Assembly: GCF_001194135.2 (NCBI RefSeq)
Contig: NC_068987.1
Location: forward strand, 6,899,154 to 6,963,153
Origin: Octopus bimaculoides
Lineage: Eukaryota
Length of the DNA: 64,000 bases
Direction: 5' to 3'
Shown here: positions 21,993 through 59,347 of the stretch, piece after piece
How positions within the stretch are numbered: position 1 is the first letter of the stretch
Layout: every line of letters starts with the position of its first letter
Translations under genes and position numbers: made by a program
Notes under the pieces: generated by a model
Database searches by the model: none
The model's input: only the letters and a program-made list of their open reading frames with translations
Told to the model about the DNA's origin: nothing

Positions 21993-22114
21993 GCGTTGGT
22001 AGCTGAGACTTTGATATTAGCGAAAACCCATGGCTACGCGGATAAGATTGAAAATGAGTTGGAAGAAGAATTGCGTCGTGACAGTAAGGGGCCCCCAAAA
22101 GAAATTTCGGCGAG
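21993..22114 (+). CDS. Hv3: Hv-family proton channel (Hv3-like), first identified coding exon (cytoplasmic N-terminus)
   Basis: Acceptor tctacag|GCG, donor CGAG|gtaagt. 122 nt, open throughout (ALVAETLILAKTHGYADKIENELEEELRRDSKGPPKEISA-R). Ends in phase 2, matching the next exon. No Met, so an upstream exon is required. Confidence 0.85.
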
Positions 22115-40910: not shown

Positions 40911-42746
40911 ACAAATAAAGTGTTGGAAAACGGGACTGAATTTGTTATTAGAGGCTATGATTTTGATGATAGTGATGCTGCAGATGAAGATAATTATAAT
41001 GTTGTTGAAAATGGAGATAAGAAATTGATTATAATAAGTCCTTCAATTTCACTCATAACATAATCTAGAGTAGCACCATCATCATCATCAACATCATATC
41101 CAAAAACCCTACTACCTCATAATGTTAACTTAAACGAATATTCAAAAGTCAACAGAATAAACGAACACTGTTTTAAGAGTTACTTAAAATGTTGTGCATT
41201 AAAATTCTCAAACCGGCAGCTATTACTGTAAATTATATATGCGAATATTATATACTTAAATACTTTTATTGCCATAGAATATACTCACTGCTGGATGAAC
41301 TGTTATGAGATCACTCTAATAACAGCTCCAGGGGACTGAATTTATTTTGCAAACATATCCAAGGTCTTTAATTTATGATATTTCTGTCCAAAAATCTGTA
41401 AGAAAATAATATCTGTATCGGTTGTATAAAGGACATCGCATTCATTGACCATTACTTCATTCACCCGAAACGTCTACATTTATGAGAGACTTTTCCTAGT
41501 TTGGAATCACATTTCTGTGATCAGCCTATGAAGCATCGTATAAAAGAAATCAGTGCCTCATTCTATCACTGGACATATATTACATTGGTTAGGCGCATCA
41601 TGACTATGATTTTACAGTAATTTCTGCATTAAATTTGATATGAATTTTAATCCATATATGTTTCGCCCGTGTATGACAAACAGTTGGTATGACAAAACGC
41701 TGGTGTTTTCCTGCCGTTCTTGTTTCAATGTCACACGACAATAATTTTGTTGTAACAACATATGTACACATATTTGCATAAAACACAGTGTTGTATTGAA
41801 GAACTGCTTAAAGATCAGAATGCATCTGATCCCCCCAGCTGTGTCAGAAGGGAAGAAAGAAACACAAGTTAGGAAAAGAAAGAAAAGATGGCCGATGGTC
41901 AAGTGGGAGCAACGAGAGAGCAAAGGAGGAAGAGTGAGGGAGAGAGAGAGAGACAGACAGAGAACAGTGAAAGGAAGAAGAAAAGAATGACAGAAAGGAT
42001 AAGAGAGAAAAAAGCGAGAAGGGGAGATAGAAAGAATTAGAGGAAGGAAGAGAGAAAACGGAAGAGTAATAGAATAGAATACATATATATATCGTGAGAA
42101 CAAAAATGGCGGTGATGGTATTATTTTTAATCTTTCATATACTCACATGCTCACACAAAAACCAACGGAGACAAACAAACAAACTGACCTCTGCACTTCC
42201 TAATACATGCACGTATATTCTCGGCATCATTTCTCACTCTCTCACTATACTCAAGTTCACACATATATACTCTTGCTCACCATATATTTACAAACATGCA
42301 GACACAAGTAAACCCAAGACACAACACTCACACACACGAACACACATGGATATTCGTATGAACACACACACACACACACACATATATATACACACAAATA
42401 TTTCACAGAGAATAGACTCATAGAAGAAACGAAAAACTGGAAGTCTTCATACAATTTGATATCTGGTAGCAATATTCGTGTTATAGAACAGCTGCCACTT
42501 CTAACGATTATATAATTCGAATTCTCTATATAAACATTTGCGTTTTTCGACAAAGCATGACCGTGGTACTTTACTGTTTTATTTGCGATGTAGTGTTATT
42601 CATTGGCCCCTTCTATTTCTATGTCCGTCCAGTTGAAAAAGTAAGTGACAATAACAAAGAAATCATTATAAAAATGGAACACTTCTTCACAATTACTGAT
42701 TAATTTTATCTACACCTTTAATTATAATTCATTTTAATTATTTCAG

Positions 42747-42871
42747 ATTACGTCGAAAAGGAGAGATGTTTTTCCATAGCCGCTTTGTGATTTTAACCGT
42801 TGTTATTTTGTGCGTTCTTGACTGCGCCTTGGTCCTGGGAGAACTTATTTTGGACTTGCACAGTGTTAGAG
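42747..42871 (+). CDS. Hv3: Hv3-like exon: S0 and S1 helix with selectivity-filter Asp
   Basis: tttcag|A...AGAG|gtaagt, 125 nt (phase 2 to 1). Encodes LRRKGEMFFHSRFVILTVVILCVLDCALVLGELILDLHSVR; VLDCALVLGELILDL aligns to human Hv1 VLDALLVLAELILDL (D112/E119/D123). Asp codon at 42820-42822. Confidence 0.93.

Positions 42872-49857: not shown

Positions 49858-49944
<87 letters not shown>
49858..49944. repeat. (CA)n microsatellite
   Basis: Direct inspection. Confidence 0.95.
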
Positions 49945-49946
<2 letters not shown>

Positions 49947-50294
49947 CATATATGTGTGTGTATGTGTGTCTTATGCATATACGTTTCTGTACATCAAGCT
50001 TTTTCAGAAAAAAAATAATATTGAAATAGATGATAACCAATCTGGCATTTTTCTGTATATGTAACTGTTTTTGAATTGCAAAAGAGTCGAACACTCTGAT
50101 CTAAGTGTGTGTCATATTTTATACGAAGTTAGATTTAAGAGCATATTAGCTTTGAAAAAACATTTAATCATAATTAATTTAATATAAATCGAGTATTTTA
50201 CCATGTTTACATAATATTTACTGTTTCAGTGAGACAAATATTCTAAACATTATACATGGAAAATCTCATTTTGTATTTTTTGTTTACATTTCAG

Positions 50295-50617
50295 ACACGC
50301 TGCAAGAAACAGAAAAACTTAGTGATTCATTTATAAATAAACTCAGGAACAAATACCCCACAGACATGGAAGGCATGCAGGAGCACTTGATCTATGTTTA
50401 TGAAAAAGTTCTAGACTCCGTAATGACGTGGCCCAAGAATAGCTCGGTGCCCAACACAACCCGTCCAACCCGCTCGCGACGTGCAGCCGACGTCGACCCT
50501 ATAATGGAAAAGTGGAATGTTCATGTGCGGTTACCCGGCTCTCATACGCTCGAGGAAGAGATAGGGCACGCCTTCCATTTGGCCAGTATCTCCATACTTG
50601 CAGTCTTAGTCGCTGGT
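50295..50617 (+). CDS. Hv3: Hv3-like exon: long extracellular S1-S2 loop and first part of S2
   Basis: tttcag|AC...GCTGGT|gtaaat, 323 nt (phase 1 to 0). DTLQETEKLSDSFINKLRNKYPTDMEGMQEHLIYVYEKVLDSVMTWPKNSSVPNTTRPTRSRRAADVDPIMEKWNVHVRLPGSHTLEEEIGHAFHLASISILAVLVAG. FHLASISIL matches Hv1 FHYMSITIL. The donor is weak, so the 3' boundary is less certain. Confidence 0.9.
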
Positions 50618-50920
50618 GTAAATATGCACTTTTATTTTTCCATTATTCATTATATTTTAAGAAAAAAAAAATGGTAACCGATAAAATGCACTTCACATAA
50701 ATAACCAACAATTGTGTAAACAAAATATATCCGAGAATTTATATTCATATGTGGAATGTGTGTGTGATGGTTTGCGTGTACGTATATATGTATATATACT
50801 TTCATTGTTTAATTGGCAGGTAGTTATAAAAGTGAGCGAAGCCTCGAGAGTGTCTGACATGGCGTTTATCGTCAATCTCTAATTACATATACACACACAC
50901 ACACAAACACGCAGGTACGT

Positions 50921-50970
<50 letters not shown>

Positions 50971-51959
50971 ACACACACATGCTTACAGATTTGGTAGAAC
51001 AAACAAAATAGTTAGTTTTAAATATTTATTATATTGACCATGGAAGGTTTTATCCTAGCATTTTCCAGGATGTTTTATTAATCTATTTGCTTACCTATTT
51101 AAGTTTAAAAAAATGCATCTTAGACTGTAAGCTCACAAAATATAACGTAGAATGTCGTTGTCATCCAATATCTGACTAGTCTTCTTGTCGTCATTTCAAA
51201 ATTATCCATCTGCTCCTACTTGTCATGTGACAAGAGTTTGTCGAATAAAATTCATGTTGGAAAGTAAAAATTTAGTTTTATGTAATAGTGAAGGACAATC
51301 CGCTGACTGTATCATGTTCTCTCCACTTATGATAATATATTAAAGTGATTTTGACGCATCTGTCAAGTTGAAGTAGACTCGGATATAGTAACCAACTAAA
51401 ATAATGAGCGATAAACATTCCATTGTGCAAAACAAATCAAATCCGGATTGTAATATATGCTTCTGTCACTCACTTATTCCTAGTTAATCTGTTATAATTT
51501 AGAATTTATTTCGATGCCTTCCTACCTTTAACTGTGATTCTTTCATATTATATTTAACTTTTTCACTATTTTGCTTATTTTTATAGCTAATGGCTAATGA
51601 TATTTTCTTTCAGTTTTCCTGTCTTCACTTCTAGTGGCATATTACGCAATCAAACTTCCATATAAACTTGATTCCTACGACGTATATTATGTGATTATAT
51701 ATGTGTGCCTCTCCCTATATACCTGTGCATATTGAACACGGCTAAATTTAATTATTTGCTGAAGTTTACTGTCTATTCTAGTCTCAATGATATTTTCTGC
51801 TGCATAGAATTTTCCTAAGAACGTGGTGTAATCCGTTCGATTCTTCTTTGGTTACAATGATACTATTACAATGATACCATTGCTATTACAATGATACTGT
51901 TGCATCCAATTTCAGCTTGTTCTGGCTCATTATGTTCTGATTTCAAATACCACCAATAT

Positions 51960-52293: not shown

Positions 52294-53498
52294 TCTCTTA
52301 TATATATANNNNNNNNNNNNNNNNNNNNNNNNNNNNNNNNNNNNNNNNNNNNNNNNNNNNNNNNNNNNNNNNNNNNNNNNNNNNNNNNNNNNNNNNNNNN
52401 NNNNNNNNNNNNNNNNNNNNNNNNNNNNNNNNNNNNNNNNNNNNNNNNNNNNNNNNNNNNNNNNNNNNNNNNNNNNNNNNNNNNNNNNNNNNNNNNNNNN
52501 NNNNNNNNNNNNNNNNNNNNNNNTTGAGTAAACGTAAGCAACGTTTTGAACCATGAAGAATTTGTACCGAATTCTAGCAGAGTTGTGAATTTGTTTTAAC
52601 ATTTTTTTGAAATTGTCTAATAATACAGACATGGTTGTGTGTGCCTTTTGCACTACTATTCTCATGGTTGTATGTTTTATAGTGCTTCAATTTTATTAGA
52701 TCAGATGTCTCACACAAGCAAGTCTGACCTGTCAGATTTTACAACACATTTGCCATTTTTTTTATGTCGTTAAAAGTAGGCATAGTCACCAACTCAGCCT
52801 AAACCTAGAGGAACATCGAGTATGTGACAGCTGAAGAGAAGCTGTACCTGCAGACTGTTAGTCTTAGGTTTCATTTGAATAGACTAGATCAAAGCCAACT
52901 GATCTTTGTTTGCTCAAATAGGACATTGTAATGCCCAGTCCTGAGATCGAACCCACAACCTAATGTTAACCAGTAAGCTACGTAACTTGCAATCCATTAT
53001 GTTAGAAAATTATATATATCCTGATGATTGATAATCTTTATATGTGTAATCGCCTGCCAGGATTTGTGTTCAATAATTAAAATTAGTGTGAATCTTCGTT
53101 TATTTTTCTATAACATGTACGTACCCTGTTAACTGATGCGTGACATATATATTAAGTTGTAATAAGATATCACAGCGTGCTTTCCGTTCTCCCTCTTACA
53201 TCTTTGTTTCAATCATGCCATTGCTATGCACACATTGTTAGTATCAGTATTTCAGCTGACATACTTTTTATGGTATTTCTTATTTTCCATAGCATTTTTA
53301 TTAAAAATTCAACCTGAAATTGCTTGCATATATGTAAAAAACATACCGAACATTTGTCTGGCATAAAGAGGTGTGCTACGAATAGTGTTTGTGCAACAGA
53401 AATATAGATATTAACAATGATTTATCTACTTTCCCATTTTTTTGTCTGTGCTTTACTGTTTTTAAGCATTCTATATTTGGCTTTACATATATTTACAG

Positions 53499-53552
53499 AC
53501 GTTATTAAAAATGATATGTTTCGGCACAAGATTTTTTAAAGGAAAATTGGAG
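53499..53552 (+). CDS. Hv3: Hv3-like small exon: end of S2 and S2-S3 linker
   Basis: atttacag|ACG...GAG|gtaagt, 54 nt, phase 0/0. TLLKMICFGTRFFKGKLE aligns to Hv1 IIFKLFVFRLEFFHHKFE (K157, E171). Too short to appear in the ORF track. Confidence 0.92.
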
Positions 53553-58288: not shown

Positions 58289-58379
58289 ACTCAAATTGAT
58301 AGTTTACGAAAATTATGTGTATCACATGGAATAACTGACAGTCAAATTAACCAGTGCCTCTATCAAGAAGAACCAAAAG
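58289..58379 (+). CDS. Hv3: Hv3-like exon: distal coiled coil
   Basis: ttttag|ACT...AAAG|gtaggt, 91 nt (phase 0 to 1). TQIDSLRKLCVSHGITDSQINQCLYQEEPK resembles the end of the Hv coiled coil (human IERLNKLLRQHG). Confidence 0.88.
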
Positions 58380-59347
58380 GTAGGTGCCTAACAGCGTACC
58401 AAATCTTTTTTCTTTCTTTTTTTCTTTCTTTTTCTTCTTGCTTTTCTTATTATTATTAATATTTTATTTTATGATTTTGTTGTTTACAGTTATGCTTGTG
58501 GATGTTTATCTGTTGTTTAAATTATTTATTGAAATTAGTCATTACTCCCTTAGCATCTTCTCTTATTCCTGCTGCTCAGAATATGGGAATATAATTTGCG
58601 CAGTGGTCAGCCGGCGAAGGTTATCGGGTAAGTAACTGAAATGTTTAAGTAATTAGGCTGTGAGTAGTCAATGAATTACTTAAATATTTGACCAATACTT
58701 CCACGTGGTACAACAAAATCAGGCAAACAGAATTAAAACAACAACAACAACAACAATATAGTGATACTAGTGTCAATGATATTATGAATAACAATAATAA
58801 TATTAATATTAATTGTAATAATATTCAATATTATTATCATTATTATTATTACCATAATAATCCTGCATTATGATGATGATTATGATAGCATGTTCTTGTG
58901 GCTATATTAGGCATCATTGTTATTTTGAAAAAATAATGAAAATACCAAAATAATTGACCGGAAAAAGACAGAATGAATAATATTTACGACTCCGTAACCA
59001 TTAGATAACGTAATATGATTTTGATAGAATTATTACTTACAAAGAAGGATAACTAGAGCATTTATCTTATAGAAAAATATAATTTACCAATATAAAAGAT
59101 TACCAAAATCAGATGTATCAGAAACCTCTTTAGCATTGAAAAAGATTTTATTCCTTCAGCAGTTAACCTAAAGATAAGATCTATTCACTTGAAATAGATA
59201 ACAGCCGAACAGACTCTTTAGACGCATCATACCATTTCTGTTTCAAAACAGAAAATGTTAAGTTTTGTAAATTGATTCAAAAATTCAAGAGAGAAGTATA
59301 TAAAAAATGTGAATTTTTGCTATTTTCTCTTATCGTTTTTGTTGCAG

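What the first reader, a model, noticed from the sequence alone, without database searches (positions are those of the whole stretch)
50295..50580. Large glycosylated S1-S2 ectodomain with a furin-type cleavage site (RSRR|AA)
Seen: a ~95-aa extracellular loop (human Hv1 has only a short linker) with NSS (50438) and NTT (50453) sequons, followed directly by R-S-R-R-A-A (50471-50488). Established: R-X-K/R-R is the furin/proprotein convertase consensus, and lumenal cleavage activates ENaC; sperm Hv1 is also proteolytically processed, though at its N-terminus. Inference: this channel may be cut in the secretory pathway into an S1 fragment and an S2-S4 fragment, separating the selectivity Asp from the S4 charges. 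That would be a protease-regulated proton channel I do not know to be described.
Basis: partly seen in the sequence, partly recalled or inferred. Interest (0 to 1): 0.75.

Follow-up and report, generated by a model that had tools for sequence, protein, structure and literature searches.

The report
Conserved convertase site in octopus proton channel
The exon encodes the outer loop of an octopus Hv3-type proton channel, and its RSRR furin-type motif recurs at the same spot in relatives from four animal phyla, so these channels are probably cut into two chains during secretion, which nobody appears to have reported.

Summary
Window 50295-50617 (+) is exon 4 of Octopus bimaculoides LOC106869300 (XP_014770462.1, 436 aa, annotated only as "uncharacterized"). 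It is a voltage-gated proton channel of the Hv3 type: S1 selectivity Asp87, S4 = LLPWRVIR. The exon encodes a 95-aa S1-S2 loop with NSS (50438), NTT (50453) and R-S-R-R|A-A (50471-50488).

In the octopus loop alone the motif is only weakly unusual (5% of composition shuffles). Across the family it is not chance. Among 66 non-redundant xPWRxxR channels, 35 carry R-x-[K/R]-R in the loop, against 2.4 expected. The motifs align in one column block about 33 residues before S2. The next residue is Ala or Ser in about 70% of sites. Motif-bearing species include cephalopods, gastropods (including the characterised Aplysia AcHv3, RRRKR|SS), bivalves, a chiton, a bryozoan, a nemertean and an annelid. 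None of 15 classical Hv1-type channels has it. Some lineages have lost it.

AlphaFold places RSRR in a low-confidence, non-helical stretch (residues 153-186) between helical extensions of S1 and S2.

Cleavage and its functional effect are inferred, not shown. The two key Hv3 papers do not mention furin or glycosylation.

The parts
5496..5558 (+). Coding exon 1 (Met1-Arg21), cytoplasmic N-terminus
   Evidence: Exact match to P0007 residues 1-21, followed by a gtaagt donor
21993..22114 (+). Coding exon 2 (Ala22 to the first two bases of Arg62). It holds the N-terminal motif LVAETLILAKTHGYADKIENELEEELRRD shared by the orthogroup.
   Evidence: Exact match to P0007, cag acceptor and gtaagt donor. 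The motif recurs in orthologues.
42747..42871 (+). Exon 3: juxtamembrane RLRRKGE and transmembrane helix S1 with the selectivity Asp87 (VLDCALV). It ends in phase 1.
   Evidence: tblastn to human Hv1 S1, sequence, PDB 5OQK alignment, exact match to P0007
50295..50617 (+). Exon 4, the finding: the S1-S2 ectodomain (residues 104-194) plus the first half of S2 (HAFHLASISILAVLVAG)
   Evidence: An 86.7%-identical copy lies in related octopod contigs L002-L004 and a 66%-identical (nucleotide) copy in L001.
50294..50416 (+). Helical part of the ectodomain: continuation of the S1 helix to residue 123, then short helices 125-128 and 135-144 (conserved YxK[VI]L...W block)
   Evidence: AlphaFold model, pLDDT about 85 falling to 63; conserved columns in alignment A2
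50441..50542 (+). Predicted disordered linker, residues 153-186. It holds the S-S of the NSS sequon (its Asn152, 50438-50440, lies one codon upstream), the NTT sequon and the convertase motif.
   Evidence: pLDDT below 50 and mostly non-helical (DSSP assigns only a low-confidence helix at 172-178) in the model. It is the least conserved part of the loop between octopods.
50438..50446 (+). N-glycosylation sequon N152-S-S. It is conserved as NTS in the other octopod lineage and as NSS in Argonauta.
50453..50461 (+). N-glycosylation sequon N157-T-T (Asn at P10 of the cleavage site). It is not conserved: PTTT in L001, PSTP in Argonauta.
50471..50488 (+). R163-S-R-R166 | A167-A168: proprotein-convertase (furin-type) motif. 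The predicted scissile bond lies between 50482 and 50483.
   Evidence: Conserved as RSRR, RLRR, RNRR or RKRR in all six octopod sequences. Family-wide enrichment.
53499..53552 (+). Exon 5: 54-nt micro-exon for the second half of S2 (TLLKMICFGTRFFKGKLE)
   Evidence: Found through conservation with L001 18412-18465; exact match to P0007
55417..55555 (+). Exon 6: S3 and S4. The S4 signature is LLPWRVIR, which lacks the first arginine and has Pro, the Hv3 type.
   Evidence: xPWRxxR is defined as the Hv3 signature in PMC10377628.
55816..55931 (+). Exon 7: post-S4 helix (SLVVAVKDHEHFRLKLVYSRKKK...), predicted to continue S4 as a long helix or coiled coil
   Evidence: Helix 255-326 in the model.
58289..58379 (+). 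Exon 8 (TQIDSLRKLCVSHGITDSQINQCLYQEEPK)
58580..58627 (+). Exon 9 (EYGNIICAVVSRRRLS). This exon is skipped in the O. vulgaris model. Residues 361-436 of P0007 are not found in the window.

Best explanation
Window 50295-50617 is exon 4 of the Octopus bimaculoides Hv3-type voltage-gated proton channel gene LOC106869300.

Shown from sequence. The protein is a four-helix voltage-sensor-only channel with Asp87 in S1 and LLPWRVIR in S4. A 95-residue insertion lies between S1 and S2. That insertion carries two N-x-S/T sequons and R163-S-R-R166|A-A. The basic motif is a positionally conserved feature of long-loop Hv channels across Lophotrochozoa. Its extended consensus is [H]-[H/R]-R-x-[K/R]-R|[A/S]-[A], which is the preference of furin-type proprotein convertases.

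Predicted. The first ~45 loop residues extend the S1 helix and add short helices. Residues 153-186, which contain the sequons and the motif, are flexible and exposed. The S2 helix starts at residue 189.

Inferred. S1 inserts with its N-terminus in the cytoplasm, as in Hv1, so the loop faces the ER/Golgi lumen. There it is N-glycosylated. In the trans-Golgi a furin-like convertase cuts after Arg166. The single chain becomes two membrane-anchored chains: residues 1-166 (N-terminus, S1 and the glycosylated helical stalk; 19 kDa before glycans) and residues 167-436 (S2-S4 and the C-terminal helix; 31 kDa). The octopus loop has no cysteine, so the two chains would be held together only by non-covalent packing of the helix bundle.

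Most speculative step. Cutting the tether between S1 and S2 may change how freely S1 and S2 move relative to S4, and so tune the unusually weak voltage dependence and proton leak described for AcHv3. In members with two sites (AcHv3, Owenia, Physella) an intervening peptide would be released, as happens in ENaC.
For: Gene identity: the spliced model equals XP_014770462.1 at 100%. It matches human Hv1 (PDB 5OQK, E=2.9e-11) in two blocks, S1 and S2-S4, separated by a 92-residue insertion. There are four hydrophobic segments and no pore domain. The S4 xPWRxxR signature and long S1-S2 loop define Hv3 (PMC10377628; PMC10911540).

Conservation in octopods: O. bimaculoides RSRR|AA; O. sinensis and O. 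vulgaris HRSRR|AA; Argonauta hians RKRR|AA; an unnamed octopod lineage RNRR|AS (L001 and P0189/P0192); reads from SRR11869391 RLRR|AA. The flanks carry substitutions and indels.

Family-wide statistics: 35 of 66 non-redundant xPWRxxR channels have R-x-[KR]-R in the loop, against 2.4 expected from shuffles; 0 of 20000 simulations reached 35. Four of 9 LLWR-type channels have it and 0 of 15 classical Hv1. A further 13 of the 31 xPWRxxR loops without the strict motif, and all five such LLWR-type loops, carry at least one KR/RR dibasic site somewhere in the loop.

Alignment and consensus: MAFFT places the motifs in one column block. P1' is Ala or Ser in 30 of 42 sites, against a 16% background. 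P2' is Ala in 18 of 42. His is enriched at P5 and P6.

Taxa: cephalopods, gastropods including AcHv3 (RRRKR|SS), bivalves, a chiton, Bugula (bryozoan), Tubulanus (nemertean) and Owenia (annelid).

Lumenal exposure: sequons occur at 2.2 per 100 aa in loops (65 of 66 loops have at least one), against 0.5 in N-termini and 0.9 in C-termini.

Accessibility: AlphaFold pLDDT is below 50 with mostly no assigned secondary structure (only a low-confidence 7-residue helix at 172-178) for residues 153-186, flanked by confident helices.
Against: There are no protein data of any kind. The AcHv3 paper reports no immunoblot and does not mention cleavage.

The octopus motif alone arises in 5% of shuffles.

The motif is absent from heterodont-bivalve orthologues (Mya, Dreissena, Mercenaria), from a gastropod paralogue clade (Aplysia LOC101857936, Babylonia, Nucella) and from Pinctada, Mactra, Patella and C. 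gigas paralogues. Cleavage is therefore dispensable for some members.

Oyster orthologues have Pro at P2 (RNPR, RRPR), a poor furin context.

An N-glycan at Asn157 (P10) could hinder access to the site.

The sequences are related to each other, so the shuffle statistics overstate independence.

The AlphaFold model rests on 32 sequences and has a mean pLDDT of 70. Low pLDDT suggests disorder but does not prove it.
Confidence: 0.6

Rival explanations
1. The conserved basic cluster is functional but is not a cleavage site. For example, it could be an extracellular electrostatic element near the mouth of the proton pathway, such as a surface-charge, Zn2+/pH-sensing or glycan- or lipid-binding patch.
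For: The motif lies about 30 residues above S2, close to the conserved HxxH at the outer end of S2. His is enriched just upstream of it. Nothing here demonstrates cleavage.
Against: The information is concentrated at exactly P4, P2, P1, P1' (A/S) and P2' (A), which is the convertase pattern rather than a general basic patch. The loop overall is only 9.8% K+R. The surrounding residues are unconserved and predicted to be flexible. An exposed R-x-K/R-R in the secretory pathway is normally cut by ubiquitous furin (established knowledge).
Confidence: 0.12
2. The site is cleaved, but the cut has no functional consequence. It is a tolerated bystander event in a floppy linker, and the two halves behave exactly like the single chain.
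For: Whole clades have lost the motif yet keep the channel core. Oysters carry a decayed RxPR. Split voltage-sensor proteins can assemble from fragments (general knowledge, from memory).
Against: A neutral site would not be held at one position with a P1'/P2' preference across four phyla and many paralogues while the flanks diverge freely.
Confidence: 0.2
3. In the octopus the RSRR is a chance or neutral feature with no role, and the family-wide pattern reflects shared ancestry plus the composition of low-complexity loops.
For: 5% of shuffles of the octopus loop give the motif. Representatives are phylogenetically related. Cytoplasmic tails of the same proteins also show some excess of R-x-[KR]-R (N-termini 23 against 7.4 expected, C-termini 13 against 6.3).
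Against: The loop enrichment is about 14-fold, against 2- to 3-fold in the tails, and the N-terminal excess is explained by one conserved juxtamembrane RLRRKGE motif. The loop motif is positionally aligned, carries A/S at P1', and is retained in all six octopod sequences despite indels on both sides.
Confidence: 0.08

Closest known systems
Aplysia californica AcHv3 (XP_005094274, 980 aa) and the molluscan Hv3 family (Chaves et al. 2022, PMC10911540; review PMC10377628)
   Same: S1 Asp, an S4 xPWRxxR signature lacking the first arginine, a long extracellular S1-S2 loop, a post-S4 helix, and the same protein family (48% identity over the matched stretches by phmmer). AcHv3 also has the convertase motif in its loop (RRRKR|SS, plus RFRR|SN).
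   Different: The octopus loop is 95 aa against 298, and its C-terminus is about 160 aa against 535. The octopus protein belongs to a different orthogroup, marked by the N-terminal LVAETL(V/I)LAKTHGY motif. It has Gly where most family members and human Hv1 have the S2 glutamate. The published descriptions call the loop unorganised and do not mention glycosylation or cleavage.
Human Hv1 (HVCN1) and its sperm form Hv1Sper (Berger et al. 2017, PMC5330862, cited)
   Same: The same voltage-sensor-only fold and selectivity Asp. Hv1Sper is a precedent that proteolysis can tune an Hv channel.
   Different: Hv1 has a loop of about 10 residues with no convertase site and a full RxWRxxR signature. Hv1Sper is cut in the cytoplasmic N-terminus, not between transmembrane helices, and not by a secretory-pathway convertase (my recollection of that paper).
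ENaC alpha and gamma subunits: furin-dependent activation by release of inhibitory tracts (PMC9163703; bioRxiv 10.1101/2024.02.12.579964)
   Same: R-x-[K/R]-R sites in an extracellular region of an ion channel, cut in the secretory pathway. Family members with two sites (AcHv3, Owenia, Physella) could likewise release an intervening tract.
   Different: The fold is unrelated (two transmembrane helices per subunit, a large folded ectodomain). In ENaC the effect on open probability is demonstrated. Here it is only hypothesised, and most Hv3 members, including the octopus protein, have a single site.
Furin-made two-chain membrane proteins such as Notch (S1 cleavage), the insulin receptor and integrin alpha chains (from memory)
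   Same: A constitutive convertase cut in a lumenal linker yields two chains that stay associated and form the mature protein.
   Different: In those proteins the cut lies in a large ectodomain of a single-pass protein, and the chains are often linked by disulfides or calcium. Here the cut would fall between two helices of one compact four-helix membrane domain, and the octopus loop has no cysteine.

Membership tests
Voltage-gated proton channel (Hv) family | Four-helix voltage-sensor domain without a pore domain (S5-S6) | tested here: met
   Four hydrophobic segments are followed by a long helix. The sequence matches Hv1 structures 5OQK (E=2.9e-11) and 3WKV. Foldseek support is weak (Ci-VSP, E=0.22) and Pfam gives no hit.
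Voltage-gated proton channel (Hv) family | Selectivity-filter Asp in the middle of S1 (Asp112 in human Hv1) | tested here: met
   Asp87 in VLDCALVLGEL aligns with VLDALLVLAEL of human Hv1. The column is nearly invariant in A2.
Voltage-gated proton channel (Hv) family | S4 signature RxWRxxR | tested here: not met
   S4 is L-P-W-R-V-I-R. The first Arg is replaced by Leu. This is the deviation that defines Hv3.
Voltage-gated proton channel (Hv) family | Proton-selective, voltage- and pH-dependent conductance | not testable with these tools
   This has been shown only for AcHv3, which belongs to another orthogroup (PMC10911540).
Hv3 subtype ('unconventional' lophotrochozoan Hv) | xPWRxxR S4 motif with the characteristic proline | tested here: met
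   LLPWRVIR. The definition comes from PMC10377628.
Hv3 subtype ('unconventional' lophotrochozoan Hv) | Large extracellular S1-S2 loop | tested here: met
   95 aa, against about 10 in human Hv1. This is at the short end of the family range of 79-582 aa.
Hv3 subtype ('unconventional' lophotrochozoan Hv) | Enlarged intracellular domains | tested here: inconclusive
   The C-terminus is about 160 aa and the N-terminus 74 aa. Both are longer than in most Hv1 but far shorter than the 535-aa C-terminus of AcHv3.
Proprotein-convertase (furin-type) substrates | R-x-[K/R]-R motif with a permissive P1' residue | tested here: met
   R163-S-R-R166|A-A. The family consensus is R-x-[KR]-R|[AS]-A.
Proprotein-convertase (furin-type) substrates | The site faces the lumen of the secretory pathway or the cell exterior | tested here: inconclusive
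   This is inferred from the Hv1 topology (both termini cytoplasmic, established knowledge) and from the 2.5- to 4-fold sequon enrichment in loops. There is no experimental topology.
Proprotein-convertase (furin-type) substrates | The site lies in an exposed, flexible segment | tested here: met
   This is a prediction only: pLDDT is below 50 and the segment is mostly non-helical (only a low-confidence helix 172-178) for residues 153-186.
Proprotein-convertase (furin-type) substrates | Motif conserved among orthologues while the flanks diverge | tested here: met
   All six octopod sequences and many other molluscs carry it, with a 14-fold enrichment.
Proprotein-convertase (furin-type) substrates | Convertase-dependent cleavage demonstrated | not testable with these tools
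   This needs immunoblotting or mass spectrometry. No ProP-type predictor was available.
N-glycoproteins | N-x-S/T (x not Pro) in a lumenal segment far enough from the membrane | tested here: met
   N152 and N157 lie more than 40 residues from both S1 and S2. Occupancy is not testable. Only the first sequon is conserved across octopods.

The most novel reading that the evidence does not exclude
Long-loop (Hv3-type) proton channels of lophotrochozoans are made as single-chain precursors and become functional, or change gating, only after a convertase cuts the voltage-sensor domain between S1 and S2. This would be the first protease-matured voltage-sensor-domain channel. The histidines at P5/P6 would make the cut sensitive to compartment pH. 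The 'leaky, weakly voltage-dependent' phenotype reported for AcHv3 in furin-containing mammalian cells would then be the property of the cleaved two-chain form.
Probability: 0.2. Interest if true: 0.85.

Novelty: new variant of a known kind. Interest (0 to 1): 0.66.

Why it matters
Voltage-gated proton channels are the simplest voltage-sensor proteins and a model for how such sensors move. A natural family in which the sensor is cut between S1 and S2 would be an experiment done by evolution on whether the covalent S1-S2 link matters for gating and proton leak.

It would also add proteolysis in the secretory pathway to the short list of ways Hv channels are regulated.

It could change how the only functional Hv3 data are read. 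[quoted passage not shown]

The prediction is cheap to test with existing clones. The family is expanded in calcifying marine animals, where proton handling matters for biomineralisation (a speculation in PMC10377628).

Tried and rejected
- A regex for the classical S4 motif R.W[RK]..[RK] found nothing relevant, because this channel lacks the first arginine.
- An ATG-initiated ORF just upstream of the S1 exon (42557-42640, MTVVLYCF...) was considered as the first exon. I rejected it because its donor phase does not match the S1 exon. The real first exons are at 5496 and 21993.
- The second half of S2 could not be found by ORF inspection, and I suspected it lay in the 52309-52523 gap. It is a 54-nt micro-exon at 53499-53552, found by conservation with L001.
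- The first two word-indexed homologue searches returned almost only ORF fragments. The exhaustive HMMER search was needed.
- Pfam gave no meaningful hit for the spliced protein.
- Foldseek against the PDB gave nothing below E=0.2; the best hit was the Ci-VSP voltage sensor.
- There are no tRNA or Rfam matches in the window.
- Literature searches for furin or proprotein convertase together with Hv channels found nothing relevant.
- I did not run a phylogenetically corrected rate test or a ProP/PiTou-type predictor, because neither was available.

Full report
**What is at the coordinates.** The region 50295-50617 on the + strand is a clean internal exon. It has a tttcag acceptor and a gtaaat donor. 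In the frame set by a split codon it reads DTLQETEKLSDSFINKLRNKYPTDMEGMQEHLIYVYEKVLDSVMTWPKNSSVPNTTRPTRSRRAADVDPIMEKWNVHVRLPGSHTLEEEIGHAFHLASISILAVLVAG. The sequons NSS and NTT start at 50438 and 50453. The window is AT-rich (33% G+C), full of (CA)n repeats and holds 11 assembly gaps.

**The gene.**
- tblastn with human Hv1 found S1 at 42.8 kb (EMFFHSRFVILTVVILCVLDCALVLGELILDLHSVR) and S3-S4 at 55.4 kb, with S4 = LLPWRVIR.
- The S1 exon ends in phase 1 with G. The loop exon begins with AC, which gives Asp104, so the two exons join in frame.
- The missing second half of S2 is a 54-nt micro-exon at 53499-53552. I found it because it is conserved in a related contig.
- An exhaustive HMMER search returned a 436-aa protein that is 100% identical to my 252-residue spliced model. 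It is XP_014770462.1, [quoted passage not shown].
- Nine coding exons map to the window between 5496 and 58627. The last 76 residues are not in the window.
- The protein matches solved Hv1 structures in two blocks, S1 and S2-S4, with a 92-residue insertion between them.
- It has four hydrophobic segments and no pore domain.
- S4 lacks the first arginine and has the proline that defines the "unconventional" Hv3 channels of molluscs. A very large S1-S2 loop is already described for that group (PMC10911540; PMC10377628). The review counts four putative Hv genes in O. bimaculoides but does not describe them.

The loop as such is not new.

**Is the RSRR more than chance?** In the octopus loop alone, R-x-[KR]-R turns up in 5% of composition-preserving shuffles, which is weak. 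The comparative evidence is strong.
- **Octopods.** All six octopod sequences keep the motif, while the flanks change and gain or lose residues:
  - O. bimaculoides TRPTRSRR|AADVDPIM
  - O. sinensis and O. vulgaris TRPIHRSRR|AADVD
  - a third Octopus-like genome TRPIRLRR|AADVD
  - Argonauta hians PRPVERKRR|AAIVDPLL
  - a more distant octopod TRPL(R/H)RNRR|ASSSDQ(G/D)PS
- **Counts across the family.** I anchored the loop between S1 and the HxxH at the top of S2 in 93 non-redundant family members (at most 50% mutual identity).
  - 35 of 66 xPWRxxR channels carry R-x-[KR]-R in the loop, against 2.4 expected from shuffles. None of 20000 simulations reached 35.
  - 4 of 9 channels with an LLWR-type S4 carry it.
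  - 0 of 15 classical RxWR Hv1 channels carry it.
  - A further 13 of the 31 xPWRxxR loops that lack the strict motif, and all five such LLWR-type loops, carry at least one KR/RR dibasic site somewhere in the loop, for example QKR|EA, EKR|SA and RRAR|SA.
- **Position.** MAFFT aligns the motifs in a single column block. They sit a median of 33 residues before S2, about 72% of the way along loops that range from 79 to 582 residues.
- **Extended consensus.** The residue after the motif is Ala (19) or Ser (11) in 30 of 42 sites, although Ala plus Ser make up only 16% of loop residues. P2' is Ala in 18 of 42. His is enriched at P5 and P6. Positions further out carry little information. This is the pattern expected for a convertase site, not for a generic basic patch.
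- **Taxa with the motif**:
  - cephalopods
  - gastropods: Haliotis, Patella, Gigantopelta, Littorina, Babylonia, Physella, and Aplysia AcHv3 with RRRKR|SS plus RFRR|SN
  - bivalves: scallops, mussels, oysters, Solemya
  - a chiton (Liolophura)
  - a bryozoan (Bugula, RNKR|AA)
  - a nemertean (Tubulanus, RHRR|AL)
  - an annelid (Owenia, RRKR|GL and RPRRSRR|SL)

**Losses and weak points.**
- The heterodont-bivalve orthologues (Mya, Dreissena, Mercenaria) lack the motif.
- A gastropod paralogue clade (Aplysia LOC101857936, Babylonia, Nucella) lacks it.
- Single paralogues in Pinctada, Mactra, Patella and C. gigas lack it.
- Oyster orthologues have a degraded R-x-P-R.
- Cleavage, if it occurs, is therefore not indispensable to the fold.
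- The sequences are related, so the shuffle statistic overstates independence. I could not run a tree-corrected test.

**Context of the site.** The loops are rich in N-x-S/T: 2.2 per 100 residues, with 65 of 66 loops having at least one. The cytoplasmic N-termini have 0.5 and the C-termini 0.9 per 100 residues. This fits the expected lumenal or extracellular orientation.

An AlphaFold model built on 32 family members has a mean pLDDT of 70 and more than 85 in the membrane core.
- It extends the S1 helix out of the membrane to residue 123 and adds short helices at 125-128 and 135-144.
- It gives pLDDT below 50 and no confident secondary structure (DSSP assigns only a 7-residue helix at 172-178) for residues 153-186. 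That stretch contains the Ser-Ser of the NSS sequon (Asn152 lies just outside it), Asn157 and RSRR163-166.
- The S2 helix starts at residue 189.

The octopus loop has no cysteine. All annotated isoforms retain the loop and the motif.

**Most likely mechanism.**
- Shown: an Hv3-type channel gene, a 95-aa loop with two sequons, and a positionally conserved convertase-type motif.
- Predicted: the motif lies in an exposed, flexible linker.
- Inferred: the loop is lumenal and glycosylated. A furin-like convertase in the trans-Golgi cuts after Arg166. (Molluscan furin and PC genes are known; this is from memory.) The result is a 19-kDa S1 chain and a 31-kDa S2-S4 chain that stay together through helix packing.
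- Speculative: the cut alters gating or leak. In members with two sites it would also release a tract, as in ENaC.

My probabilities are about 0.6 that the site is really cleaved in vivo and about 0.2-0.25 that cleavage measurably regulates the channel.

**Known or new.** The Hv3 family and its long loop are published. The octopus gene is an uncharacterised member. Neither the AcHv3 paper nor the 2023 review contains the words furin or glycosyl-, and 'cleav-' (searched only in the AcHv3 paper) refers there only to sperm Hv1. Full-text searches that combined proton channels with furin or proprotein convertase found nothing relevant. Subscription-only papers are not covered by these searches. 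Within those limits, the conserved convertase site is an undescribed feature of a known family.

**Verdict.** It is worth a simple wet-lab test. AcHv3 was recorded in furin-containing mammalian cells, so the published phenotype may already be that of a cleaved channel.

Noticed in passing
window 50615-50617 (Gly211) with 53499 onward; alignment A2 around column 607: At the S2 position of human Hv1 Glu153, an internal counter-charge for the S4 arginines, the octopus channel has Gly (LVAG|TLLK). Most Hv3 relatives keep Glu (LV-E-T). A minority (Sinanodonta, Haliotis asinina, Ylistrum, Solemya, C. gigas, Mactra) also lack it.
   Followed up: partly
family-wide; octopods: O. sinensis/O. vulgaris P0153/P0187 'IHRSRR', P0189 'LHRNRR': Histidine is enriched at P5 and P6 just upstream of the convertase motif: 12 of 38 at P6 and 9 of 38 at P5. 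This could make recognition pH-dependent, which would be notable for a proton channel. It is not present in the O. bimaculoides sequence itself (P-T at P6-P5).
   Followed up: no
P0204 (Mytilus galloprovincialis) versus P0013 (M. edulis): Two otherwise near-identical mussel models differ by exactly 20 residues (SSIQYKVRVKRTLPMSTILPV). That segment contains the RVKR site. The difference is either an alternative splice form without the cleavage site or a gene-model error.
   Followed up: no
P0018 (AcHv3), P0069, P0072 (Owenia), P0067, P0078 (Physella); Some family members have two convertase motifs in the loop, 3 to 176 residues apart (38 in AcHv3). Double cleavage would release a soluble peptide, as with the ENaC inhibitory tracts.
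   Followed up: no
window 42747-42768 (R62-L-R-R-K-G-E): A second R-x-[KR]-R (RLRR) lies just before S1 on the cytoplasmic side and is conserved across the family (R[FLV]R[RHK][KR]GE). It explains the apparent motif excess in N-termini. It would not be accessible to lumenal convertases.
   Followed up: partly
P0003 (Pinctada imbricata FSP39_011377): This public gene model skips the 18-residue S2b micro-exon: S2 runs straight into S3 (…ILGVLTL|IFLDGII…). This is probably an annotation error caused by the very short exon. Other automatic models of this family may have the same fault.
   Followed up: partly
P0061, P0065, P0074, P0079, P0071, P0088 and others: A bivalve/gastropod paralogue clade with S4 ILPWRVIRIVNSF ends in T-[KRH]-L (…STKL, …HTKL, …YTHL, …NTRL). 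This looks like a class-I PDZ-binding C-terminus. The octopus protein ends in …SQSRP and lacks it.
   Followed up: no
window 49860-49946 and 50885-50980; N runs at 8620, 10358, 13216, 14070, 38025, 46069, 52309, 56010, 57436, 62646, 63555: Long (CA)n microsatellites flank the loop exon on both sides. Eleven assembly gaps (2037 N in total) interrupt the introns. Residues 361-436 of the annotated protein are not found in the window.
   Followed up: partly
window 58580-58627 (exon 9): The 16-residue exon EYGNIICAVVSRRRLS is absent from the O. vulgaris and Argonauta models and from the unnamed octopod transcripts (…QEEPK|VEPKS…). It is probably an alternatively spliced cassette in the cytoplasmic tail.
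   Followed up: no
(hit list): No squid, cuttlefish or nautilus orthologue appeared among the 92 best relatives, although four octopod genera did. This is either a database gap or a loss of this orthogroup in decapodiforms.
   Followed up: no
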